Origin: Klebsormidium nitens
Lineage: Eukaryota; Plantae; Klebsormidiophyceae
Direction: 5' to 3'
NCBI GenBank assembly: GCA_000708835.1
Contig: DF237691.1
Location: forward strand, 1-38,368
DNA length: 38,368 nucleotides
The notes under the pieces are model-generated. The model did not search any database. It was given only the letters and a program-made list of their open reading frames with translations, and was not told the DNA's origin. A program made the translations under genes and the position numbers. Positions 18,886 to 32,700 of this stretch are shown here, in pieces. Position 1 is the stretch's first letter, and the number at the start of each line of letters is the position of its first letter.

Positions 18886-21800
18886 ATGGCGAGTACATGG
18901 TTGCTTGCGAACGCCGAAGCTGGCTTCTCCTCGAAATGCCTCTCCATTCAAATTAATAATTGCAACCGTGATCAAGTAGGCAGCATTGTTAGGAAAAGGC
19001 AAATTGCTGCTGAGGGATTCGGGTTTAGTGCGAGGGCGTCAACATTCATACAAAGTTCTAGTCAGGGTCACAGACTTCGGTCCCTTCCACATGGACTCGG
19101 TGTCGAAACGGGGAGAAAGTTTGGCACAAGCTTCGCTTCACAGTCATGCAGATGCCGATTGCCGCAGATATCATGCTCAGGTACAACGAGGTTAGAGTGC
19201 GAACGAGGGAAGTGGGAGTATGGAAGTTTCAGTCGGAGTGGCCTCGTGGGAAGAACATGTCGGTTGCAGAGCAAAAGGGATCATCATACGCGGGCAAAGG
19301 CGTCCAAAGAACAGTGGACGCTAGACCAGTCACCGTATGAGACATTAGGTATGCAACTTTCCTGATCTTCCTGCTTCTTGTTGCTGTTGTCTCTTTTCGA
19401 AGACTTTCGTCTAAGAGCTGGAGAATACTTATCTCCTTTAATACAGACATACTGCCCCGACTCTGTACTGATATGCGTCTTGAAGCGAAGGTTCTATGCT
19501 TCGAAGCCACACTGGCACCAAGCATCCAAAGCTTGATGACGAAGGCCAGTTTCTAGACCCCTGTTATTCCAATTATTTTAGGGAAGTGGTTCAAATCAAC
19601 ATCCTGATTCAAGCAGCCAGACACTCGTATTGAGTGCTCGAGGCCACCTTGGAAAAGGGTCCCAGAGCGTCAATTTCCCCCTTCGCAGAAGTATCTGGGC
19701 AGGTGTGGTAGAGAGTATGAGTCATCCTCCAAACGCTGATCACTTCGTTAACTAACCTACTGATTCGCTTAATGTGTCCGTGACAGGGGTGCAAGGGGAC
19801 GTCTCAGAAGAGGGCATTAAAACCGCGTACCGGAACCTCGTGAAAATCTACCACCCGGATGGTAAGCCCCGCCAGTTGATAGGCCCCCACAAAAGATCTT
19901 CTTGCATGCGTGCACTGACTCAGGACGCTGCAAAAAGGTCAGCTCTGGACCATGGCTGGTTGCCCTGTCTTACGACAGACTTTAGGGAGTGGACGCGCGG
20001 GGTTCGGTGGGGCCAATTTGTGCCACGACAATAATACATGGAGTCTGGGGCACTTGTCATATTCAAACATTTGAGGAGGTTCCTGAGGTTCTCTGCACTC
20101 ACATGATCAGACAAGGTATGAGAACCAGTGCATGGAGCGCGCTGCGCAGATGACCGGGATGTAGGTGACAGTTCATGTTCGGTGGAAGCAAGCCGTGTGC
20201 TTAAAACGAGAAGGTAGGTGTTGGATCCTTTATCGGTCGATATGGATCCTCATGTCTTCCCCGACCGGGCGTTTCTGCAGTCTACCAGGGCACTGAAGAC
20301 GGGGAGCCCGCTGGTGCCCGCTTCATCCGCATCCAGGCCGCTTACGAGCTGCTTATGGACCGGGAGGCGCGGGGCAACTATGACCGGGATCACAAACGGA
20401 ACCCCTTCATGGTGAGCGGTGATGATGGCAAAGGCTTCTTGACAATCTGATATAACAGCAAAATGCATGGGCTGTTCCAGTGTAGATTCTTTAAGATTTT
20501 GCGTTCCTCATTGCCGGGGCTGTTTCGTATGTACTGATTACTCTGTGCTTGCTCTCATCGACCCAAGTATGGCTGACTTGAGTCTGCCAATCGCTTACTG
20601 AGTAGTATGCCCGATACCTTTTCACTTTATTTTTTCCCAAGGGAAGGGGTGTGAGTTGCGAAGCAAGTCTCAATGGGTTCGCGGTCTTGGAGGGTTTGTT
20701 ACGCTTTGAATGGTCCAAGGTTGTTTGCCAATTCTTCCAAGACTCATCGATATCCCCCAAAGGCCCCACTCTGGTCGACTCGACCATGTGAGTTGCCCCC
20801 ATACTGATGCAGGCGAACGAGCTGTAGCAGGTAATGAGACTCGCGCAAGAATGGCCTCGTAATCAGTGTTTACCACGAAATTGTTGGAATGCCGGTTTTC
20901 AAACCGACTACTAGAATGGTAGCCGGTTTTACAAAGGTGCCGGGCGGTTTGTAGCCCCCATTGCCTGTAGAGAGGCGCATTTCAGCCAGTTTTGCGGACC
21001 GACTGGTCCGCAGTCGGTTGGTTACTGCTGAAATCGGTCAGTCACCTTTCGCTTGGAAGTCGGTTCGTGGTAAAACATGCTAATTTGTAACCCTCAATCC
21101 CCCAGCTTCTTAGCAACGTCGAAATCGTTACAATCGTAAGCATCTCTATCGTTGCAGGCGAGTGAGGCGTGGCAGGCGTACGTGGCGCGCAAGAAGAAGG
21201 CGTTCGAGCAGCGGGGTGACGTGGCAGCCACCGCGTGGGCCGAGGTGCAGCGGCACGAGATGCAGGTCAAGGCGCGCCAAATGGCCAAGCAAAAGGTGCG
21301 GAGCGACATTTTTGGAAGCTTTCGAGAACGTAGACTCAGAGTGCTGATAGGTCGACGTGGTTCAAAAGTGTTGAAAGCGGAGGTCGTAAGGAGAACATGG
21401 TCCAGAGTCTGAAAAGGTGGACATACTGAGGAGAACGCGCTTCGAAGTTGTTCGTCTTGGGAACCGGAAGGTGAATGTTGTTCGGGGTTGCTGGAAATTG
21501 CGGGCTTCAAGTGTGGCGGGATTCTAACTTGGTTCGGAGGTGCCGGAAGCTGGAGTTTGCAAGGAGGTGATTCGGAGGTGTTGAAAGTTGGAAGGGCGCT
21601 GCGTTATGTGAAGAAGAGCGGCTTGTGCCCTGTAGTTGCGGGCTTCTTGATTGCTTGACGTTGATTCCGTAGAGGGGTGCCAGATGTTGAAACGGACTTT
21701 CTGGCTCGTGACGTCTAACTAGCTGTTCCTGGACTCGTGGGCTTAAGGAGGAGTACATGTGATCGCCTTCGATCCTTTGACAAGGCTAAAGATTAGTCGA

Positions 21801-23166
21801 GCCTGACATCCGAAGATAAGTGTCAGAAGGCTTTTTCATCTTTGAAAAGGGTTGGCTTTCGTAGGTACTTCTGGCGGCTTCACTGACTGGAAAGATCTGC
21901 TGTCGATTTCCATCATTTTCTCAGGATCACTTGATTCTGGCGAGTACTGGATCGCTGAATCTTGTACAATCAAACCGTTCTCGAAGTTAAGGGGGTTTGC
22001 CAGATTCATCAAAGTGATGGACTCTTATAGATTTTACATTGTTGTTTTCCCACTAATTTCAGATGCACCCCAAACAGGAGCGGCGGCTAGTGGCTGAAAG
22101 ATAAAGGGGGAAAAACTTTATCCGAGACCCTATTGAAAGCTCTTAACCCTCCTCAACGTCAAACCTCTGTACCCTTTCTGAACCCGAAAGGGAGTATCGA
22201 TTGTGTAGCAATACATTCAAATGTAGGATGAGCCGTTTGACACACAATATGCTCGTTGACTTATAGCTTATTAGAACGCCCTAACCCTCGTCTGCAAAAA
22301 ATGGTATCCGTAACCCGTTACTGTGGCACGCTCAGATGGATCCCGAGGAGGAGCGGCGGTTAGTTGCCAATGAGGTGCAGCTGAAGGCGGAGCTGTTAGC
22401 GACCTCAAACTTCGCTTCACATTTCGGAGCCCACGCTTTCTCGTCACCCTGATCCCAAATCGGCAAACTCCCTTTTTCTGGATGCCAAAAATCTGCTCAG
22501 TCCAATATCCTAGATGCGCTTCACTTCCAGAGCGTCTCGGAGCCCACGCTTCTCGAACCTTAACCCTTCTCTTAACCCCAAAGCGGGGATTTACCCGTAG
22601 TGGAACGTAATGATTCCGAATAAATAAATAATTATTTGCCGTCGGAAAGTTAGAAACTCATTTTTGGGTTCGGAAAGTGGATTTTTGCATTCTAAAAATA
22701 ATTGCTCAAGGGCGTTCGGATTCAAAAAAAGTACAACCGGTCGGTAGAAAACAAACAAATGTGGGGCAGAAAAGCGCTCGGGGGACGATTCCGGCCCAAT
22801 TCGGATTTGGGGTCGTATTTAAGAAATTAATTGAGAAGCTGAGGTCGTATTCGATAAAATAATTGTAATTTTTGACCATTCGGAATCATTACGTTCCACT
22901 ACGGTACTTTCTCGAAAAATCGAGAATCTGATCGTCCTGATATCCTATGATCGTGAAACCCTCAGATGGACCCCGAGGAGGAGCGGCGGTTAGTTGCCAA
23001 GGAGGTGCAGTTAAAGGCGGAGCTGTTCGACCGCACGAGCAAGCGGCACATGCTGGTGCTCAAGAAGCGGGACCTGGCCAAGCGGCGCGCGGGGGAGGAC
23101 GAGAAGAAGCTGCTCGTGCAGAAACTACTCCTCGAGGAGGGCTTCGAGCTGGCGGACGAGGACTGA
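18886..23166 (+). CDS. DJC65: Chloroplast-type J-domain co-chaperone (DJC65/At1g77930-like), 335 aa
   Basis: Exons 18886-19348, 19787-19861, 20281-20411, 21158-21295, 22966-23166; 1008 nt, in frame. J-domain SPYETL|GVQ...AYRNLVKIYHPD|VY...FIRIQAAYELLMD, then ASEAW...KKKAFEQRGD..AW and DPEEERR...KRHMLVLKKRD, matching my recollection of the plant DJC65 family. The S/R-rich N-terminus resembles a transit peptide. The symbol rests on recall, not a search. Confidence 0.85.
20867..21077. repeat. About 210-bp segment bounded by short inverted repeats, possibly a decayed MITE
   Basis: TGTTTACCACGAA (20867-20879) versus TTCGTGGTAAAACA (21064-21077). Internal hairpin GCGGACC-gact-GGTCCGC. Confidence 0.4.
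22331..22397 (+). repeat. Intronic partial duplicate of the 5' part of the DnaJ last exon, including its acceptor
   Basis: ctcag|ATGGATCCCGAGGAGGAGCGGCGGTTAGTTGCCAATGAGGTGCAGCTGAAGGCGGAGCTGTT differs from 22961-23027 at 4 of 67 positions. Confidence 0.9.
22595..22904. mobile_element. 310-bp MITE in DnaJ intron 4
   Basis: Perfect 27-bp TIR CCGTAGTGGAACGTAATGATTCCGAAT (22595-22621 and 22878-22904). AT-rich interior. Flanked by TAC/TAC, or by TA if one terminal base was lost; superfamily unresolved. Confidence 0.9.
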
Positions 23167-25356
23167 CCTTTTCGGGGGGTCCGAAATTCTAGGAGAAGGG
23201 GGGAAGGGGTGGGAGAGGCATGTTGCGGATTGGAAGTGCTTAGGGAACGGTGCTGCTCGTGGGGAGCTTTGAGTTGGAGGACTGACGCCTCTCAGGGGGC
23301 TGCGGTTTGAATGGGAAGGTGGGGGGTGGAAAGGGTGAACGGAAGCATTTGATTGTAGTGTTTCGGTTGACAAGAGTGCTGTCCAAGGAGGGCGTCGAGC
23401 TGGAGGACAAGGATAGCCGCCCTCGGGGGGGTGGCCTTTTCACTTGGTTGACGGGAGGGGGGGGAGAGGGGCAAAAGGACGTGTTGGGGATTGCATGAAG
23501 ATTCGGATGTGATGGGTTCAACACTTGTACTTCGAGGAAGCTTCCGAGCTGTATGACAAATGCTGACGGGTCAGGAGCGTGCGTTTTGCTAGGGGCAAAA
23601 GGCGGGGGACGGAGGGGCGTGTACTGAAGTGGGCGCTGGAGAGCGGTTCAATGATGCTTCTTCGAGGAGGGTCTCGAAGGCGGGGACGACGATTGTGTCG
23701 TCCAAGAGGTTGTTCCATTTCGTCGGAAGGAGGCGCGCCGTCAGTGTTGCTAAAATTCGGGTGCGAGGGAGTGAGGCATTTAAATTTCTAGCGCAAGCGA
23801 GACCGTAATCAAAAGCGGGCGGGCGCTGCTTTCTAGTGTCAATCTGAACGCATCAGAGGGGGATTGCGACAAGTCGAGACGGTCTCGAAGTGCACGGATG
23901 TTTGGCGCGGGGTTGAGGACCTTTTGAAAGGACCGGCCGTCTGCGGCGGAGACTGAGAGCCCGGAACGGAGTTCGTTCCGTGGGGAACGGGTCCGGGGCT
24001 GGAAGCGCGAGCTGCGACAACGAAGCCTGAGTCGGGGAGCCTCGGCTCAACCTGTATGGCTTCGACTGTGTGGCTTTACGCCGTACGGAGGCTAGGGGGA
24101 GAATCCAAGCCGGATATGCGAGGTGGAAGGTGTGTTGCGACGGAGAAGATTTGATGCTTGCGTTGGGCTGGTTGCGGGTAGGCACCACGCACCCGGACTG
24201 GTCGTCTCGCCAGTGTATTTTGATAAGTCTGATGCTGGGATCATGGCGGAGCTGCACTGGCGTGCTTCACTTGGCGAGCAGCGAGACGGTAGCCCACTTG
24301 TGAGTGTGCGCTTCATTAACATTCTGAAAAGAGGTGGGTGTTGCACAACAGAAAACGGCAGACGGCTTCGCTCGCTGTCAATATGAAAAAGCCGCAGGTA
24401 TTGCTACGACACAGTTGGTGACAAGACTGTAAGTAAATGCTCGCAGATTTTTGAACTATGATGTCAATTGATGTTGAAATGCACATCACCTAAACTCTTG
24501 GGGAACAGGCCGGCGCCGCCGCTGTACTAGGTTGCAGAAAACGCAGTGAAGCCTTCTTTTGACCATAATACATTTATTGAATTGCACTCCGACGCTCAGC
24601 TCATTAAGTCAGTAATTGCAGATGATTGGTGATGTAGTATCTTCAAATCATGTAAGTTGACCATGCTCCATGCGTGCATGCATACAGAGTTCCCATGCAT
24701 CGTCCGCGCACTGGCAGCGGCAAGCAAAATTCAAGTTTTGTTTGCATGATTGATGCTATATTTAAATAACTTTGAACCATAAGAGCTGTCCAATGTGCAT
24801 GTTCCTGAGAAACGTTTCGAAAGAACTTGCCCAGACATGACATCATGCTATGTTTGTGGCCCGGCCCGCTGCAAAATAAACGATTCCGATGCAGTCTATA
24901 TCCGGCCGGCCGGCCACGGGCATGCAAGTCGCATATGCATGGTAAAATGTGAGTTTCTTGGGCCGCCCAGGCGGGCAGTGCTGCACATGGTGCCAGGATC
25001 TGTAGTAGCTAGGCGCCAAGTAGCATGGCAGGCAGGCTGCGACCGTCGAAAGGATGCAATTTTAGCAAAAATCAGATCTAGGACAAAAGTGAATGCCCGT
25101 AGGCATCCAGTCATGCACGGTTCTAGCTGATCGTGCACAGGTCGTTTCCAAGCTGTTTGAAGCCTCGGCCACTGGCTAAGAGTCAAACAATCTGCAACTG
25201 TAGGTTGCGAGCTGCCTGCGATTAGATTCTAATTGTGAGAAGGTTAAATGGACAAACACTGGTGCTTCTGGCGCTGTACCTGATCTCGGACATCAAACCT
25301 CGATAACAGCGGCCCACACGCTCACATCGTGGCAAGCACTTTCAGACGAACGAACC

Positions 25357-26415
25357 TCATGTGAGCTGATGGGAGACTACGGCACTCTTCTGCCGCAGCT
25401 GTCTTGGAACGAAGACCTCACTCCGTCCCGCGGCCTTTTCATCCACGGCTGCATCCTCTAGCTTCGGCGCTTTGTTCAGTCGCACCCGCGCCAGCCACGG
25501 CGTCGCGCCGCAGCTGCCATCAGCCAGCAAATTCTCCGGCTCCTCTCCCCGCCGCTTATGCGAGTTAGAGCCGGGCGACAGAAGCGACTCCGGAGCGGGC
25601 TCCCTCGCACCACCCAGAACCGGCCACTCGCTTATGTCCAGAGCCGGGGGCCTATAGTCCGCCAACAGCTGGGCGCCAAACCGCTTGAGCCCGTCCGCCT
25701 CTCCGTTGCCTTCCGTCTCCATCACCCGCTTTGCCAAATCCTCATTCAAGTTGACCCCGTCTTGTGACTTCCCCCCGCTTGCCCGATCCAAATCAAACCT
25801 TTCCACAGAACCCCCTCTTTTCGCAGTCCCTGACTCGGCGGCTCCGGGGAGTACCCTTCCGCTGCCTTCAGCACGCTCCTCCCTGTTTGCCCGCCCTTGC
25901 TGAACGCCCTCTCTCGCTTGGCCCCTCCCGCTGCTCTTAGAACCGTCCACTCCGACGTTTCCGTCGCCTGATGGCTGACACGTGGCACGTAGCCTGCCCC
26001 TCAAGCCCGTACTTGATTGTGGTCCAATGCTCTCCCGTGTCGAAGTGCGCCCTCTTCCCATGGAGTTCATCAAAGCCGCCCTGGCCGCCAGCGCTCTAGG
26101 GGGCAGAACCGCCTCCCAGTTCGTCCCCCCGGTTTGTGAATCCGACTTGCTGGAAGGCAAATCGCTGCCTATGCGACCCCTGGCTCCCTCGTTCTCTTTC
26201 CCCTCGAAGTCCGGCCTGCTGAACCGCCCCCTACTCCGGCTTGTACTTCTCGAACTTTCCGCGCTCTGTAATTTTTCCAGCGTTATGTGGTCGGCGAACC
26301 GAACGGGTTTGGGGCGGAGCGAAGGTTTGAGGTTTGCAAGCGCGCGGTTTGCGACGGAGGGGTCTAGGTGGAAGATGCCCTGCCAGCCGCGCATCCGCAC
26401 GGGAGCCTCTAGCAG
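25357..26415 (-). CDS. Alternative distal terminal exon B of the ASCH gene (long isoform, 471 aa in total)
   Basis: Acceptor ccctgcag at 26416, phase 0. Starts LLEAPVRMRGWQGIFHLDPSVANRALANL, which completes the ASCH domain, followed by about 300 aa of S/R/G/E-rich low-complexity sequence. Further splicing near the 3' end cannot be excluded. Confidence 0.7.
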   Translation of the reverse strand: MLEAPVRMRGWQGIFHLDPSVANRALANLKPSLRPKPVRFADHITLEKLQSAESSRSTSRSRGRFSRPDFEGKENEGARGRIGSDLPSSKSDSQTGGTNWEAVLPPRALAARAALMNSMGRGRTSTRESIGPQSSTGLRGRLRATCQPSGDGNVGVDGSKSSGRGQAREGVQQGRANREERAEGSGRVLPGAAESGTAKRGGSVERFDLDRASGGKSQDGVNLNEDLAKRVMETEGNGEADGLKRFGAQLLADYRPPALDISEWPVLGGAREPAPESLLSPGSNSHKRRGEEPENLLADGSCGATPWLARVRLNKAPKLEDAAVDEKAAGRSEVFVPRQLRQKSAVVSHQLT

Positions 26416-26528
26416 CTGCAGGGTGCAAACGGAGAAGCTTCAAACTTGTCCGTACCTAGTTCTTCCTCTTTCGTTCGTTCTCACGGGGGCTGACAAGAGC
26501 GCCTGTGCAATCAGCGCTCCCCCTGCAA

Positions 26529-28594
26529 CTACGAGCTGGCTTTCTTGCCTCCCTTCGCCTTTCCCTTTGCGACTTCACCCTGGTTTGAAGATAAGTCTTT
26601 GACGTGATCAGAGAATTTGACGGGATTTGGGCCTAAGGCGGATCGGAGACCACGGACGGCTGCCGAGGCGACCTTCTTCTCGAGCTTGTAGATGCCCTGC
26701 GCGCCACTCATCTGGAAAGGGACCACCATGCGCTGCAAAGTGGGGGGAAATCGAGCGAGGAATCTTTAGATGCCCAGAGCATGGCTTGGAATATTGAGAT
26801 AAGTAAAAGAAGTGTTCAGTGATGGCCAACTGGTTCGAATTCGTTGTTCTCTTCTGCTTCTCCGTCATGATAGAATCTCTGCAGGAACCGCCTGGAATGA
26901 GAGAGAGGAGGAACGAGAAAGCGTTGTTGCTGAAGAAGGTTCCGAGTGGTCGAGGCATCCAACAAAATGAGGGCCCCAAAGATTGCACGGACGTCAAAAC
27001 AGACAAAAGTTCGAACGGAAGATTTCCCTGCATGCAGAGAATCAATTTCTAACTCCTCACTCCAGTTGTGGCAGTGAAACCCAGACCCAAACCCACTTTA
27101 TCTGAAGGGACGGACTTCCGCTGACTCAACTGTCTTTGATGAGAAAGCGAGAAAAACGACAAAGAGAGCTGAAGCTGGTCTCCATGGAAGGCAAGGAAGG
27201 GAGAGCAAGGCGTGACGGCATATTCTATGACATAGACGGCCAGTGAAGCCATGGCAGACGAAAATAGTTGTAAAGAGCGAATCTTTTGAAACCTGTGTGC
27301 GCAAAGAATGACGGGGCTGACAGTTATAACCACCATGTGTGCAGATTCTGGCAGAGTCAGAATCTAAAAGTTCCATAAGCCATTTGAGTAACTCTGGCAG
27401 CCAAGTGGGCTACAGAGGCATTGGATTCTGAGGTCATGGAGAATCTAACTGAAGCTACCCTCACCTGAGCATTCTCGCAGAGGAAGCCGTACTCTGACAT
27501 CAGCTCAAGTTTGATGGAGTCGGGAAGCGAGTGGACTTGGCTGAGATCCTCTCTACTCAAGCATCCTACGACCTCAACACAGCCTGCACGTTGAGAAGAG
27601 GACTGAGATCATTCCAGTGAATCTAAGAAGGAAAATTTTGTGCTTTCACTTTAACACACGAAGTCACTTCTTAAGCAGTCTCAACCTTAATGACCACATC
27701 ATAGACCAGATTTGAAACCAGCAGGAAAACAGTCAGCATGATGTCCATGACTTGCCAAAGTCATAGCTTTGACTGGCTTGTCAAAGCAAGCAACATCCAA
27801 TCAGATGAAAAAGTTGATAGCTGAGCAGACCTCATCGCCTGCAGTACGACAAATGAAAGGGTGCTTCTTTTTCTGAAAACAGGCTGCACTGCACGTCAAA
27901 CAAAGAACTTTTGGACAATCATGTTGCAAAGGGGGAACTCTTTGAGCATCTCACCGAGCAGAACGGAGGTCGGGTAGTGCTCAGGAAACTTCACTTCAGT
28001 AACACCCTCTGCAGCATAGATATCTCGGTACAGCTCCTCCACAGCGTCAACCCCGTCAGGAGTTTTGGATGCAGCGTGTATCCACAGCCGTCCTGCATCC
28101 CAGTACTAAGTTGATCAGCCTTCCCAAGAGTTGAAAAGCGTTCAGCCTTCTTAGCAGTGTGACGATGCCAGACTGCAGTCACCCCTGCTTCCCGGTGACT
28201 AACCAAAAGTGCAAAAACACCTTATAGGAAATAGTAAACCAAGCAAAAGGTGACTCCGGCAGTGTCTGAGCTTGGTCTCGGGGAGGGTGTCAGATGGTTG
28301 AAAAAGAATCTTCTACTTTTTTTATTCTACAAGCTTTTCAGATTACTTAACAATGCCAACAGTTTGCAAGCAGTGTGCAAGAGTCGATCTTAATGTTTCT
28401 GTGCCACAGCTTAGCTTCTGCCAGTTCTGGTCTTCATGAAGCTTTGTGATCTTTGAGCAATTGGCCTACTACATGACACATGGAACTTGCTCACCTTTGT
28501 GTTTGGTTGGCCAATTCCTTCCTTCGATGCGCTTGATGCCGTAGACAACTAACGAAGCCCAAGGCTGGTGAAGCGTCAAACAGAGCTCCTCCAT
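26529..28594 (-). CDS. ASCH (ASC-1 homology, PUA-like) domain protein, short isoform 186 aa
   Basis: Exons 28594-28495, 28092-27955, 27583-27465, 26732-26529. Reads MEELCLTLHQPWASLVVYGIKRIEGRNW..G|RLWIHAASK...FPEHYPTSVLLG|CVEVVGC...LCENAQ|RMVVPFQMSGAQGIYKLE, with the QPWA, EGR, RLWIHA and LLGCV motifs of the ASC-1/TRIP4-type ASCH family. Confidence 0.9.
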
Positions 28595-29742
28595 GTTTGC
28601 ACTGATCAGATCGACTTCTATCTACGCCGATTAAAATTCAAATTGCACCAAAGTTTGAATCAACCAGCATTCGATTGCTCAATTATAAACCGATCAGAGA
28701 ACCAGGCAACTAATTGTGGCTGTCGCTGCTTCAATCTTCAGAAGTCGTAAAGATGATTTCCATACAATTTCTCACAGCTGCTGAGCGGCGCACAAAGGTA
28801 CTCTGTACTTGCGTGTTTGCGCCCTCTGTCCCGGCAGCAGCCAGTTGTCTCCAGGACCAGAGTCCAGCCGCCTCCAGCGCCTTGCGCCTTCAAAGGACTC
28901 AAAAAACAAGATGAAGGTAGCCGCCTGAGCATGCTGTCAGTGTTACTGAGGTAGCCATTGGAAATTGCTTGAGCGGAAGCCCAGGGCTGGAAGGGCGGAA
29001 TAGCGCCGGACAAGCGGAGCAGATCTAGGCATGGGGAGCCCTCAGCCCGGAATGCTAACTTCTGCGTGGGGCAATCGATCATTGAATCTACGGTTGAGAT
29101 GCAGGCCCGCAGTAAGTTCGTTCATCCATTTCACGGACGGCACATGTATCGCTAAGTAGCCACGTGATCAAACTGTTCTCTCCCGTGAACATCGACGGTC
29201 CTTCTTGGGCTGAGCCGGTCAATCTGACCACTCAGAGCTCAGCGCAAATTTGGGAGGGGAATGTGAGCAGCACAAGCTGAGCACACGCCTCCTCATGGCG
29301 GCGCACAATGTCGCCACCAGGGCACAAGGGGGAAGGAGAGCGGGCTGGTGGCAGCTGCCCGCTTCTCCTTCCTGGCATATTTGCACCTGCCGAGGCTGTA
29401 GTTACTCTTCTTCCGCGTTTGCAGCATTTGCTTCTGTATGCCCCTCTCTGACTGCCAACATCCCCTTCCGTCAGCAGCACTTGGCAGGCCGCACCGCTCT
29501 GCTTCAGAGAGCTGCTCTGCAGCCGACAGTGGCTCCGGCTGACTCACAGCTCATACAGGCGGTCAGGCTTTGCTGCAGCTCGTTTCCAGCTCCTACTTGG
29601 TCGCCACATTGTCCCAGTTTAATAGCCCCACCATTCCTTTGCAGCTGGCGTCACCCTTGTCACTGTTAGTACTAGCACTAGTAGACACTTGACCAGCCAG
29701 CCACATTGCTGCAGCTTGAGGTGCCACTGGCAACAGTTCACC

Positions 29743-32700
29743 ATGGGGGGCAACGACTACTTCAGCGTGACGGCCATGTTTGTGATGTTCAGAGAGTGTA
29801 TGGAGGCGGCTGTCATCATGGCGGTTCTACTGCAGTACGTGGCAAAGACTGGCAAGACGTATTTGAAGAAACAAGGTGCGCCTAGAGAGACTCTCTCCAC
29901 TGGCACGGGAGCCTGTTTGACCAGTGGCGCCAAGCTACGGTAGAGCAGTTCTGGTAGCTGAGTGTGTGTTTGCTCTGGCTAAACACTGCTCTATTCTCCT
30001 TTAGTGCACCAATGTAGACTTCCTGGCAGTTGTTTGAGAGCTTTTGTGCAATGGCGCCCATGTGTTGCACCTGGCAGAAGTGACAGCCGACAGAAGTGTC
30101 TCACGCTCCTCATTCAGCAAGACCCTGGTACTCAAGAACTGACCTTCGGTTTTTGAGTACTGAGTATTTTTCACTATAGGATTGTTCAGTTGTTGGCAGC
30201 GTCCCTCCTCTAAGCATTGGATGCTCAAGCGCCACCCTAGATTCCCCTCTCAATTTCCTGTTGTGCTTGACTCTGCAGTTCCCCCATCACTTTTCTGACA
30301 GTCCTCCCCTCTCCCTGTGCAGTCTGGATCGGGGCAGGCCTCGGGCTGCTGCTATCCATCATTTTTGCAGTGATTTTCATTGTGATATACTATACCCTCG
30401 ATAAGGAGGTGTTCACCGGCAAAGGGGAGCAGATCTTCAGCAGGATCATCTCCGTGATTGCCTCCGTCATGATCACCATCCTCGCCTTCGGCATGCTCAA
30501 AATGTTTGCGCTCCAGGAGAAGTGGAACCGCAAGCTTAAGAAGTCAGCTTTGGAGGTGAGGTCCGGTTTCATATATCAAGGACTTCATGGTTGGACCGCG
30601 TTTGGGGCGTTCACATTGACGAGGCTGGATCCTTGGTTCTAGAATCTGATGCATCCTTCTTCCTTAAAAAGTGGTCCCCTGTATGCCGGAGCTTCCTGCT
30701 ATTCCTCTTGAGTCAGGGCTCCTTGCAGATTCATCATTGATGCCTCTGATAGATGCGAAGAATAGTGAAGATTTTCTTTTCAAGATTGTCTGCTTGTTCA
30801 CTGCAGGCACTAGAGGGCAAGCAGGCGTTCACCACTCGCTATGCTCTCTTCATCATTGCATTCACCGCCGTCATTAGGGAGGGCATTGAGGCTGTGCTGT
30901 TCCTTGCCGGGGTTGGGGTTGGAACGCCGTGGAAAGCCATTCCCCTGGGCGGATTTGTGGGTGCAGCACTTGGCGTGTTCTTTGGATACTTCCTTTTCTT
31001 TGGGTAAGTGAATCCTGGGTGCCTCCCTTTGATTGTCGTCATAACCCAAAGTGGTATGGCAGTCTACTTGTTAGCCTTCTGGCCAAGACCTTTACCGAGT
31101 AACTCTCCTGACCAGACCAGAAAGATGGGACCAGCTCCCTATGAAACCCTGTTTAGCATATGCCACGCCGAATGCAAAGGTTGACCTTTAGAGCAAGCAA
31201 CATCAGCATTACTCAGGGGTGCATTGTCGAATTCTCTGACGAGCAAGGATTACATACGAAGTGCTGCAAATTCTGTATGTGAAGACACAAGGTCAAGGGT
31301 GTGAAAAATGTGTGCAATTGGTCACTCGGCAGCCTCTGTCCGAGGGAATGCATTTTGTGATAAATGGACACTCAGGAATGATTTGCCTGCGTGCTCAAAG
31401 TGCTCGAAATATCTGATGGCATCTACACTTTTCCGAACGATTTGATGTCAGCTGATCCTGCTTCCGCTCCGCAAGTTGCATGGATGCAAGTGCCAACGCT
31501 TATCCCCCAAGTCTGAGCTCCGCTCCTCTCGGGTTGCAGGTTGAAGCCGGTGCAGATGAAGTGGTTCTTCTACATCTCGACCGTCATTCTCATGTTCCTC
31601 GCCGCAGGGCTCATGATGACGGGCATCCACGAATTCCAGTTGGTGAGCGGCCCAGCTCATTATTAAGAATCTTCAGTTTGGCAATAGTAAGCTTTAGCAC
31701 TAGTAATGTAACCAGCCTGGGACGGGTAGGGTTAGTTTGGGGGTTAGGGTGGGTTCGGTTGGGGAGCGGGGGATTCTGTGGGTTAGGTTTTTTGTGTTAG
31801 TCCAGGAGCTTACTACTGCTAGAGCTCAGTTTTTGCTATAATAAGAGACATCTTATTTCTGCCAATCTGCTCTTGGATGGTGTACTCATTGCATTCTAGC
31901 GTTACTTTTTCCCGTTTTCAGCATGCATGGACCGGTGGCCAAGCCAACAGACAGGGTTTTGGGAAGCCGCTGAACTATGCAGACTGCCGAAAGAGTCCGC
32001 AGTGCTTTCCAAGCGATGGCTCCCCGTGCCTCTTGCCACTCATTCTCTGCTTCACATTGTTCGTCCTCTTTTCTGGGCGTCAGCCACCTGAAGTTCATTC
32101 CAGGCCTGACGAATCAACTTTTGGCCCTTTCCAGGCGGGAGCCTTCGGATATTTTCCCCCTGAAAGTGATGAAGGCGAATCAGCGCCGGCAGAGGCAGCG
32201 GCCCCCGGACCGGCCCCGGAGGAAGAAGAGAGGGAGCTCTCGTGGCATAACAAGGCGCTCTGGAACATCTGCAGCTGCTGTAGCGATGCGGTGAGGGACC
32301 TTGACTGGTAGTGCCCGCCGTCAGAGTCAGGCCCCTAACTTTGAAGCAGGGACGCTGCATGCTGGTCGTTACGTAGAGACAGCTGCAAGTTTCTGCTCCT
32401 TAACAAATGAATGGTTGCAATCATCAGAGAGCATGTCCGCACTAGGTCGCAGATGCATGGACGGATCGTCCTCCCTCTTGCGCGTTCATCCTGTTCTTGC
32501 TGTTTCTTCCATTCGCGCAGAAGCCAATCTTCTTCGCCGTTTGACAACCAGCAAGAACACAATGCTATGCGTCCAGAACAACCGTCAACTCGTTTTCCAC
32601 TTTGATCTGCTCTCTCCTTCTGATTGCACAGTCTCACGAAGCCGCACTTCTCCCTTACAGGACCAAGGGTTCTTCGAGTTGGCCCGGGCGCTGGTCGGCT

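What the first reader, a model, noticed from the sequence alone, without database searches (positions are those of the whole stretch)
25357..26732. Duplicated, mutually exclusive terminal exons each complete the ASCH domain
After exon 3 (...LCENAQ, phase 0) come two TGCAG acceptors, at 26733 and 26416. The exons align in register from codon 1: RMVVPFQMSGAQGIYKLEKKVASAAVRGLRSALGPNPVKFSDHV and LLEAPVRMRGWQGIFHLDPSVANRALANLKPSLRPKPVRFADHI (18/44 identical). Both match the C-terminal ASCH segment (plant-type KLIIPFEMRGYQGVYNL, recalled). Exon A ends quickly in a Lys-rich tail (KGKAKGGKKASS*, 186 aa), while exon B adds about 300 aa of likely disordered sequence (471 aa). One alternative 3' splice choice would swap part of the nucleic-acid-binding fold and the whole tail. 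Both copies are stop-free despite deep divergence, suggesting both are under selection. I do not know of this arrangement in ASCH genes.
Basis: partly seen in the sequence, partly recalled or inferred. Interest (0 to 1): 0.8.

Follow-up and report, generated by a model that had tools for sequence, protein, structure and literature searches.

The report
Two alternative endings for algal ASCH gene
A Klebsormidium gene for an ASCH-domain protein carries two tandem, diverged copies of its last coding segment, and real transcripts splice to either copy. The result is a short canonical protein that is not annotated and a long-tailed annotated one, a well-supported but not unprecedented case of exon duplication plus alternative splicing in a green alga.

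Summary
The gene is Klebsormidium nitens KFL_007420060, on the minus strand. Exons 1-3 end in phase 0 at 27465. Two AG acceptors follow, at 26733 (segment 4A) and 26416 (segment 4B).

- **Homology:** 4A and 4B align in register, 18/43 identical, E 5e-12. Both match a profile of the C-terminal ASCH segment of 48 outgroup proteins: 4A 64-68 bits, 4B 26-37 bits, shuffles at most 10.6.
- **Transcripts:** RNA contigs from four studies show junction 27465>26415 in 4/4 runs and 27465>26732 in 3/4. No 4A-to-4B splice was seen.
- **Refinement:** 4A transcripts run unspliced through the 113-nt spacer into 4B. This is one terminal exon with two alternative 3' splice sites and a shared 3' end. 4B is 3'UTR in isoform A.
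- **Conservation:** five Klebsormidium-like lineages keep both copies and both acceptors. dN/dS is 0.06-0.10 for the 4A core, 0.20-0.42 for the 4B core and 0.33-0.39 for the 4B tail.
- **Outgroups:** three land-plant loci share the intron position but have one copy.
- **Annotation:** only isoform B (471 aa) is in databases. The 186-aa isoform A, closer to the family consensus, is not.

The closest analogue is KRAS exon 4A/4B. This scan had already noted two other duplicated-exon cases elsewhere in this genome.

The parts
28495..28594 (-). Exon 1 coding part (ATG at 28594). N-terminal ASCH segment with the GxKxxExR octapeptide (GIKRIEGR). Ends in phase 1.
   Evidence: Pfam PF04266 27.2 bits against a cut-off of 21.2. 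Junction 28495>28092 in 4/4 RNA runs. Identical to P0001 residues 1-33.
27955..28092 (-). Exon 2
   Evidence: Junctions on both sides in 4/4 runs. Matches P0001.
27465..27583 (-). Exon 3, ends ...LCENAQ in phase 0. It is the common donor (GT at 27464-27463) for both alternative acceptors.
   Evidence: The same phase-0 intron position is found in Sphagnum, Diphasiastrum and Drosera orthologues.
26733..27464 (-). Intron 3 in its short form (isoform A, 732 nt). It is also retained at low depth in some RNA contigs.
   Evidence: Joint 'skips 732, CT..AC' in X1, X8 and X19. Unspliced contigs 26706-27494 at depth 5-15.
26529..26732 (-). Segment 4A: 44-aa ASCH C-terminal core plus a 23-aa Lys-rich tail and the stop codon (26531-26529). 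Completes the 186-aa isoform A, which is not annotated.
   Evidence: Outgroup profile 67.6 bits. Closer to the outgroup than 4B in 48/48 comparisons. dN/dS 0.06-0.10. Conserved in 5 lineages.
26416..26528 (-). 113-nt spacer. It is 3'UTR in isoform A and the last part of the intron in isoform B. The 27 nt before the 4B acceptor (26442-26416) form a conserved pyrimidine-rich tract plus AG.
   Evidence: Contigs 26389-26735 are colinear with the genome in X1 and X8. 21 of 27 columns before the acceptor are invariant in 5 lineages, against 20 of 87 in the rest of the spacer.
25357..26415 (-). Segment 4B: a diverged 44-aa ASCH core plus a 308-aa Gly/Ser/Arg-rich tail and the stop codon. Completes the annotated 471-aa isoform B. 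It is untranslated in isoform A mRNA.
   Evidence: P0001 is 100% identical. Outgroup profile 32.7 bits. dN/dS 0.20-0.42 for the core and 0.33-0.39 for the tail. The tail is mostly below pLDDT 50 with a few helices.
25053..25356 (-). Shared 3'UTR. RNA contigs end between 25053 and 25207.
   Evidence: Contig ends, table 8. Contigs cannot fix the true poly(A) site.
26511..26531 (-). 5' arm of a possible RNA stem (a lead only). It covers the 4A stop codon and the 18 nt after it.
   Evidence: MFE fold and RNAalifold consensus. 20 pairs, 91% of cells paired in 5 sequences, 1 compensatory pair, 5 pairs broken in some sequences.
26413..26435 (-). 3' arm of the possible stem. It covers the pyrimidine tract, the AG acceptor and the first 3 nt of 4B.
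   Evidence: The evidence is weak: z-score -2.07, and the covariation term is not favourable.

Best explanation
A tandem duplication in the Klebsormidium lineage copied the acceptor and the first part of the last coding exon of a stand-alone, TRIP4-type ASCH gene. The pre-mRNA now offers two 3' splice sites, 317 nt apart, to the single donor of exon 3.

Shown:
- Splicing to the proximal site (26733) gives an mRNA that translates 4A and stops at 26529. The spacer and all of 4B follow as roughly 1.3-1.5 kb of 3'UTR.
- Splicing to the distal site (26416) removes 4A with the intron and translates 4B.
- Both mRNAs share exons 1-3, which carry the GxKxxExR octapeptide.

Inferred:
- Both mRNAs probably share one 3' end.
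- The isoforms differ in the last two or three beta-strands and the C-terminal helix of the PUA-like barrel, and in the tail. Isoform A (186 aa) has a family-typical core with a short Lys-rich tail. Isoform B (471 aa) has a faster-evolving core that alone keeps the near-invariant Arg and the aromatic residue of MRGWQG, plus a 308-aa Arg/Gly/Ser-rich tail. That tail is largely disordered and has conserved short motifs.
- The two products are sub-functionalised versions of one nucleic-acid-binding or ac4C-related enzyme, differing in substrate, partners or localisation. The acceptor ratio varies between samples.
For: - **Junctions:** both are seen in RNA contigs. 27465>26415 is in 4/4 runs and 27465>26732 in 3/4, from four studies. 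One contig joins exons 1-2-3-4B, and another joins exon 3 to all of 4B.
- **Read-through:** contigs 26389-26735 are colinear with the genome. Contig depths add up: in X1, 70.4 + 43.5 + 14.5 is about the 128 of exon 3, and 75.7 + 43.5 is about the 124 of the 4B region.
- **Homology:** 4A against 4B gives E 5e-12. Both match the outgroup C-segment profile, with 0 of 1000 shuffles reaching them.
- **Conservation:** five lineages keep both ORFs and both AG acceptors. Locus L001 is syntenic over 13 kb.
- **Selection:** dN/dS is below 1, with bootstrap CIs excluding 1 for the 4A core and the 4B tail (both pairs tested) and for the 4B core in the Kn-L001 pair.
- **Acceptor:** the region before the 4B acceptor is conserved.
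- **Outgroups:** land-plant loci have the same phase-0 intron and one copy.
- **Family:** Pfam ASCH, human TRIP4 ASCH at E 1e-29, and the model matches TRIP4 at E 2e-11.
Against: - The RNA evidence comes from assembled contigs, not raw reads. The runs are only guessed to be RNA, although the spliced GT..AG joints show that they are.
- Contig depth is a poor measure of isoform ratio and cannot place poly(A) sites.
- No protein-level evidence exists for either isoform.
- Isoform A has a very long 3'UTR, which in land plants tends to trigger nonsense-mediated decay (my own knowledge). Part of it may therefore be unproductive.
- One run (X12) shows no A junction.
- The isoform B ASCH model has only moderate confidence (pLDDT 70, lower over 4B). 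It is not shown that the diverged 4B core folds as well as 4A.
- Isoform A could not be folded, because the joined step was left out.
- The 4B core dN/dS for the closest pair has a CI reaching 1.09.
Confidence: 0.85

Rival explanations
1. Only the annotated isoform B is functional. Use of the proximal acceptor gives an unproductive mRNA with an early stop and a long 3'UTR that is removed by NMD or serves only to tune the level of B.
For: Only isoform B is annotated or present in the 5.8-billion-protein collection. Isoform A mRNA has a 3'UTR of about 1.3-1.5 kb. Run X12 lacks the A junction.
Against: 4A is the more conserved copy, with dN/dS 0.06-0.10 and CI upper bound 0.26 or less. It is closer to 48/48 outgroup proteins and scores 64-68 bits on the family profile. 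Its ORF and acceptor are kept in five lineages. The A junction has higher contig depth than B in two runs. A purely regulatory poison segment would not keep an ASCH-like protein sequence.
Confidence: 0.07
2. Only isoform A is functional. 4B is a decaying duplicate lying in the 3'UTR, and its use is splicing noise that the gene predictor happened to pick.
For: The 4B core is much more diverged from the family: 15 against 22 of 44 residues identical to the outgroup, and 26-37 bits. The tail has no relatives outside Klebsormidium-like sequences, no Pfam family and no Atlas lead. The tail is mostly disordered.
Against: The 352-codon frame is open, while the other frames have 4-13 stops. Tail dN/dS is 0.33-0.39 with CI below 0.53. 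Conserved islands persist down to 43% overall identity. The pyrimidine tract and AG are conserved. The B junction is seen in 4/4 runs, and in two runs it has the higher depth or is the only junction seen. 4B keeps the near-invariant Arg and the aromatic residue that 4A lost.
Confidence: 0.05
3. The two segments belong to different transcription units or result from an assembly error. For example, a collapsed or chimeric scaffold, or a separate downstream gene that starts at 4B.
For: None found. 4B is preceded by an in-frame GTG/TTG that prokaryote-style gene callers used.
Against: Single RNA contigs join exons 1-3 to 4B and exon 3 to 4A, with no mismatches in four studies. The same order is found in independent assemblies from JGI, ENA and Logan. 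Only 113 nt separate the 4A stop from 4B, leaving no room for upstream exons.
Confidence: 0.02

Closest known systems
KRAS exons 4A/4B (vertebrates)
   Same: There are two homologous alternative last coding exons. Each supplies the end of the globular domain plus a different C-terminal tail. The upstream copy carries its own stop, so the downstream copy is untranslated in that mRNA. The arrangement is conserved over long times and is attributed to exon duplication followed by alternative splicing (PMC9882654; the 3'UTR detail is from my own knowledge).
   Different: In KRAS, 4A is a cassette exon with its own donor and an intron before 4B. Here no splice removes the spacer, so the choice is between two acceptors of one terminal exon. 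The protein family and kingdom differ. The tails differ about tenfold in length.
Mutually exclusive homologous exons from tandem exon duplication (e.g. ATE1 7a/7b, Dscam; Kondrashov and Koonin 2001, Letunic et al. 2002, as cited in PMC9882654; PMC6071210, PMC7797038)
   Same: The segments are adjacent paralogous coding units in the same phase and register. Only one is translated per mRNA. Both are conserved. There may be a role for RNA pairing near the splice sites.
   Different: Classic MXEs are internal exons of nearly equal length, and exactly one is present in the mature RNA. Here the event is terminal, the lengths differ (67 against 352 codons), and the 4A mRNA still contains 4B. The RNA-structure element is only a weak lead.
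Human TRIP4/ASC-1 ASCH domain, and land-plant 'activating signal cointegrator 1-like / RNA-binding ASCH domain' proteins
   Same: Exons 1-3 plus either segment align with the TRIP4 ASCH domain (E 1e-29). Land-plant proteins of 180-290 aa are 50-56% identical. The octapeptide is of the GKER type. The phase-0 intron before the C-terminal segment is shared with land plants.
   Different: TRIP4 has an N-terminal zinc finger that docks on ASCC3 (PMC10076317), and this gene has none. Land-plant loci have one copy of the segment, split by an extra intron. Their tail motif (AIAGARAAATQFSK) is not detectable in the 4B tail.
Alternative TM10 exons of a MATE transporter in the same genome
   Same: It is in the same organism, involves tandem duplicated exons, and a follow-up agent reported either-or use in transcripts.
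   Different: It concerns an internal exon of a membrane protein, and I did not check it here.

Membership tests
ASCH domain (Pfam PF04266), TRIP4-like GKER subgroup | Profile match above Pfam's gathering score | tested here: met
   Exon 1 alone scores 27.2 bits against a cut-off of 21.2. P0001 carries a precomputed PF04266 hit.
ASCH domain (Pfam PF04266), TRIP4-like GKER subgroup | Semi-conserved octapeptide GxKxxExR (Lys and Glu essential in TRIP4, EOLA1 and TthASCH according to bioRxiv 10.64898/2026.02.27.708502) | tested here: met
   GIKRIEGR lies in exon 1, P0001 residues 19-26. G19, K21, E24 and R26 are invariant across the 49 aligned proteins.
ASCH domain (Pfam PF04266), TRIP4-like GKER subgroup | PUA-like beta-barrel fold completed by the C-terminal strands and helix | tested here: inconclusive
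   The isoform B model has pLDDT 70. Strand 111-126 runs into 4B, and helix 138-146 lies in 4B. Foldseek finds TRIP4 ASCH at E 2e-11 but with TM of only 0.5-0.6. Isoform A was not folded because the joined step was left out. 4A fits the family profile at 64-68 bits.
ASCH domain (Pfam PF04266), TRIP4-like GKER subgroup | Nucleic-acid binding or N4-acetylcytidine amidohydrolase activity | not testable with these tools
   This needs biochemical assays of both isoforms.
Alternatively spliced homologous exons born by tandem exon duplication | Adjacent coding segments that are significantly similar, in the same phase and register | tested here: met
   BLASTP E 5e-12, ungapped over 43 residues from the second codon. 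Both follow a phase-0 junction.
Alternatively spliced homologous exons born by tandem exon duplication | Transcripts that use one or the other copy for coding | tested here: met
   Joints 27465>26732 (3/4 runs) and 27465>26415 (4/4 runs). No 4A>4B joint was seen.
Alternatively spliced homologous exons born by tandem exon duplication | Strict mutual exclusion at RNA level (exactly one copy in the mature mRNA) | tested here: not met
   Contigs 26389-26735 are colinear with the genome. 4A mRNAs continue into 4B.
Alternatively spliced homologous exons born by tandem exon duplication | Both copies conserved under purifying selection in related species, with a single copy in outgroups | tested here: met
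   Five lineages keep both copies. dN/dS with CIs is. Sphagnum, Diphasiastrum and Drosera loci are single-copy within 5-8 kb on either side of the gene.

The most novel reading that the evidence does not exclude
The choice between the two acceptors may be set by a conserved RNA stem of about 20 bp. The stem would pair the 4A stop-codon region (26531-26511) with the pyrimidine tract, AG and first bases of 4B (26435-26413). When formed it would hide the distal acceptor and favour isoform A. When melted or unwound, for example by temperature, desiccation or a helicase, it would expose the acceptor and favour isoform B. That would be structure-guided selection of homologous coding segments in a streptophyte alga, of the kind so far worked out mainly in animals. 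It would switch an ASCH enzyme between a bare domain and a form with a long RG-rich tail.
Probability: 0.15. Interest if true: 0.65.

Novelty: new member of a known kind. Interest (0 to 1): 0.45.

Why it matters
- **Annotation:** the K. nitens gene model and the public protein collections hold only the long isoform. The shorter isoform is closer to the family consensus and at least as abundant in two RNA data sets, yet it is missing.
- **Rarity in the green lineage:** this is a clean, RNA-supported and evolutionarily conserved case of tandem exon duplication turned into alternative splicing in a streptophyte alga close to the land-plant stem. Such events are seldom documented there. Two other notes from this scan suggest Klebsormidium may have several.
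- **A natural experiment on the ASCH fold:** the same catalytic or ligand-binding N-terminal half is completed by two C-terminal halves that are 42% identical. One lacks the near-invariant Arg and aromatic residue, and the other carries a 308-aa RG-rich tail. With ASCH proteins now proposed as ac4C erasers and DNA/RNA binders, comparing the two isoforms could show what the C-terminal wall and tails contribute.

Tried and rejected
1. **Is the 4B tail the ancestral land-plant tail?** By eye, its ARAA-containing motif resembled the land-plant AIAGARAAATQFSK motif. An HMM of 44 outgroup tails scored the 4B tails at -0.8 to -0.1 bits, inside the shuffle distribution. A motif-only HMM did no better. 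Rejected as unsupported.
2. **Tandem A-then-B splicing.** Candidate donors inside 4A (for example AGG|GTGAAG near 26574) would enter 4B out of frame, and no such joint exists in four runs. Rejected.
3. **A separate poly(A) site after 4A.** Contigs run colinear through the spacer and depths add up. Not supported, but contigs cannot exclude a minor site.
4. **Antisense ORF 25982-26602 (+), 206 aa.** A similar ORF exists in L001. The introns are GT..AG on the minus strand, and I take this ORF to be a by-product of the sense-strand composition. Not pursued.
5. **What the 4B tail is.** Pfam gave only a sub-threshold DUF2967 hit. The word search found only six Klebsormidium-like proteins. The ESM Atlas gave nothing usable. 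AlphaFold2 was mostly below pLDDT 50.
6. **An isoform A protein id to fold.** None was among the proteins of 91-289 aa found with P0001:1-165. Selaginella P0021 had no locus on record.
7. **Searches not run.** The third word search and the big representative search would not have changed the verdict and were flagged as costly. No tree was built to root the duplication, because 44 sites with one fast copy would be unreliable.
Full report
**What is there.**
The window is a whole 38,368-nt scaffold of Klebsormidium nitens. The annotated protein KFL_007420060 (P0001, 471 aa, Pfam ASCH) is 100% identical to the translation of 26415-25357 and contains exons 1-3.

Reading the minus strand gives this model:
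- Exon 1: 28594-28495. The ATG is at 28594 and the exon ends in phase 1.
- Exon 2: 28092-27955.
- Exon 3: 27583-27465. It ends ...LCENAQ in phase 0 and is followed by GTGAGG.
- Acceptor 1: CTTTGCAG with its AG ending at 26733, opening a 67-codon segment (4A) that stops at 26529.
- Spacer: 113 nt.
- Acceptor 2: CCCTGCAG with its AG ending at 26416, opening a 352-codon segment (4B) that stops at 25357.

**Is the similarity real?**
- 4A and 4B align without gaps from residue 2 to 44, with 18/43 identical and 29/43 similar (BLASTP E 5e-12).
- I built a profile from the matching columns of 48 outgroup ASCH proteins (land plants and one stramenopile, no Klebsormidium). It scores 4A at 64-68 bits and 4B at 26-37 bits in three lineages. 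A thousand shuffles of each never exceed 10.6 bits.
- The 4B frame has no internal stop, while the other five frames have 4-13. The region is GC-rich like the other exons.

**Are both used?**
The look-up of sequencing runs listed 20 runs from 7 studies that hold the stretch, under two organism labels. I laid the contigs of four runs from four studies on 24900-28900.
- The runs are RNA in fact. All show the spliced joints of introns 1 and 2 with CT..AC ends on the plus strand, which is GT..AG on the minus strand.
- The joint 27465>26415 (skips 1049) is present in all four runs.
- The joint 27465>26732 (skips 732) is present in three.
- One contig of X12 joins exons 1-2-3-4B. One contig of X19 joins exon 3 to the whole of 4B. 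Another X19 contig joins exon 3 to 4A.

**A refinement of the anatomy.**
In X1 and X8 a contig runs colinear with the genome from 26735 to 26389. That covers 4A, its stop, the spacer and the 4B acceptor, and extends into 4B.

Contig depths behave like a flow:
- In X1, 70.4 (A joint) + 43.5 (B joint) + 14.5 (retained intron) is about the 128.1 of exon 3.
- In X1, 75.7 (4A plus spacer) + 43.5 is about the 124.1 of the 4B region.
- X8 behaves alike.

The tool warns that contig depth is a poor measure, so I take this as suggestive. It implies that 4A mRNAs do not end in the spacer. They carry 4B as a 3'UTR of about 1.3-1.5 kb and share the 3' end (contigs end at 25053-25207).

The event is therefore a choice between two 3' splice sites of one terminal exon, with exclusivity at the level of translation. 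The apparent A:B depth ratio is about 62:38 in X1 and X8 and 38:62 in X19. A was not assembled in X12.

**Conservation.**
- The word search with 4B found only six proteins: the K. nitens one and five fragments from Logan, ENA and JGI assemblies.
- Their contigs (L001-L007) represent four further lineages. The 4B tail is 74-77% identical in the close lineages and 42-43% in the distant ones.
- All of them keep exon 3 ending LCENAQ, an AG acceptor, a 4A-like ORF, a spacer of roughly 100 nt, a second AG acceptor and a 4B-like ORF.
- L001 is syntenic with the window over 13 kb, including an FTR1-like gene upstream.

Nei-Gojobori dN/dS (bootstrap CIs):

| Segment | dN/dS | Bootstrap 95% CI |
|---|---|---|
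| 4A core | 0.06-0.10 | upper bound 0.26 or less |
| 4B core | 0.20-0.42 | 0.07-0.45 for Kn-L001; 0.16-1.09 for the closest pair, Kn-L002 |
| 4B tail | 0.33-0.39 | 0.24-0.52 |

- Synonymous divergence between 4A and 4B within a genome is saturated (dS 1.7-2.1). The duplication is therefore old and predates the split of these lineages.
- The 27 nt before the 4B acceptor are 21/27 invariant in five lineages, against 20/87 for the rest of the spacer. This fits a functional pyrimidine tract and acceptor.

**Outgroups.**
- In Sphagnum (L008), Diphasiastrum (L009) and Drosera (L010) the intron after ...CE.PQ is at the same place and phase.
- In each, the C-terminal segment occurs once within 5-8 kb on either side of the gene. 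It is split by one more intron after ...NL.KK, which both Klebsormidium copies lack.
- 4A is closer to every one of the 48 outgroup proteins, with a mean of 22 against 15 identical residues out of 44.
- However, 4B alone keeps the near-invariant Arg and the Trp/Tyr of the MRGWQG motif. 4A has Ser and Ala there.

**What the protein is.**
- Exon 1 alone passes Pfam's ASCH threshold and carries the octapeptide GIKRIEGR.
- P0001:1-170 matches the human TRIP4/ASC-1 ASCH domain at E 1e-29 over residues 5-144, which extends into 4B.
- An AlphaFold2 model of the isoform B domain (pLDDT 70) places the end of a long strand, a hairpin and helix 138-146 inside 4B. Foldseek finds the TRIP4 ASCH structures, including the dsDNA complexes, at E about 2e-11.
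- Literature:
  - The TRIP4 ASCH domain binds nucleic acid and helps activate the ASCC3 helicase (PMC10076317).
  - A 2026 preprint reports that several GKER-type ASCH proteins remove ac4C from tRNA and that the octapeptide Lys and Glu are essential.
- These residues are in exon 1 and are shared by both isoforms. The swap therefore changes one wall of the barrel and the tail, not the catalytic motif.
- The 4A tail is Lys-rich (6 of 23 residues).
- The 4B tail has 13% Gly, 11% Ser and 11% Arg, with 16 RG/GR dipeptides and pI 9.6.
- The full-length isoform B model leaves most of the tail below pLDDT 50. It predicts helices at 225-238, 342-372 and 458-470, which coincide with conserved islands.
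- The tail has no relatives outside Klebsormidium-like sequences, and no detectable similarity to land-plant tails.

**A lead on regulation.**
The RNA around the spacer folds so that the 4A stop region (26531-26511) pairs with the pyrimidine tract, AG and first bases of 4B (26435-26413) (z -2.07, with 9 of 200 shuffles folding as well).

RNAalifold finds the same helix in the five-lineage alignment. Of its 20 pairs:
- 9 never vary.
- 5 vary on one side only.
- 1 has a compensatory change.
- 5 are broken in some sequences.

Overall, 91% of cells are paired. With five sequences in about three independent lineages, and a structure derived from the same sequences, this is weak. I report it only as a hypothesis.

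**Comparison and novelty.**
- The kind is known: tandem exon duplication followed by alternative use of the homologous copies.
- The nearest analogue is KRAS 4A/4B. There too, each copy finishes the globular domain and adds its own tail. There too, the upstream copy's stop leaves the downstream copy untranslated.
- What differs here:
  - No intron separates the copies.
  - The tails differ about tenfold in length.
  - The gene is a stand-alone ASCH protein.
  - The organism is a streptophyte alga.
- I found no paper on alternative splicing of ASCH genes or on this gene.
- This scan has two other notes of duplicated-exon splicing in the same genome. I did not check them.

I file this as a new member of a known kind. 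It is real, conserved and RNA-supported, with an unannotated canonical isoform, and of moderate interest.

**Left out.**
All searches were done exon by exon or with the database protein P0001.

Noticed in passing
window 25982-26602 (+); L001 5907-6824 (-): There is a long antisense ORF (206 aa in K. nitens, 305 aa in L001) opposite the start of 4B, the spacer and the end of 4A. It is probably a by-product of the purine-rich sense strand, since all introns are GT..AG on the minus strand.
   Followed up: partly
L005 1934-3073; L006 641-1780; L003 5001-6020: In the distant lineage the 4B-tail ORF is cut short, at 199 aa followed by a separate 156-aa ORF. In L003 the last roughly 40 residues are in another frame than in L001. 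This could be a tail intron, a real frameshift or an assembly error.
   Followed up: no
window 29725-32296 (-); L001 200-2646: An FTR1-like iron permease gene lies upstream of the ASCH gene in both K. nitens and the metagenomic relative. Two downstream genes (window 20274-23100) are syntenic too.
   Followed up: partly
L008 7370-7722; L009 17894-18373; L010 10462-10980: Land-plant orthologues split the C-terminal ASCH segment with an extra intron after ...NL(E/Q)(K/R)K. Both Klebsormidium copies lack it. Land-plant tails share a conserved motif, AIAGARAAATQFSK, that is absent from Klebsormidium.
   Followed up: partly
window 26706-27494 and 27555-27874, 28146-28413: Unspliced contigs cover introns 1-3 at low depth (2-15) in the deepest runs, indicating intron retention or pre-mRNA.
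   Followed up: no
window 28595-28900 and beyond: RNA contigs that include exon 1 continue more than 300 nt upstream of the ATG, past the end of the laid stretch. This is either a long 5'UTR or an overlap with the neighbouring transcript.
   Followed up: no
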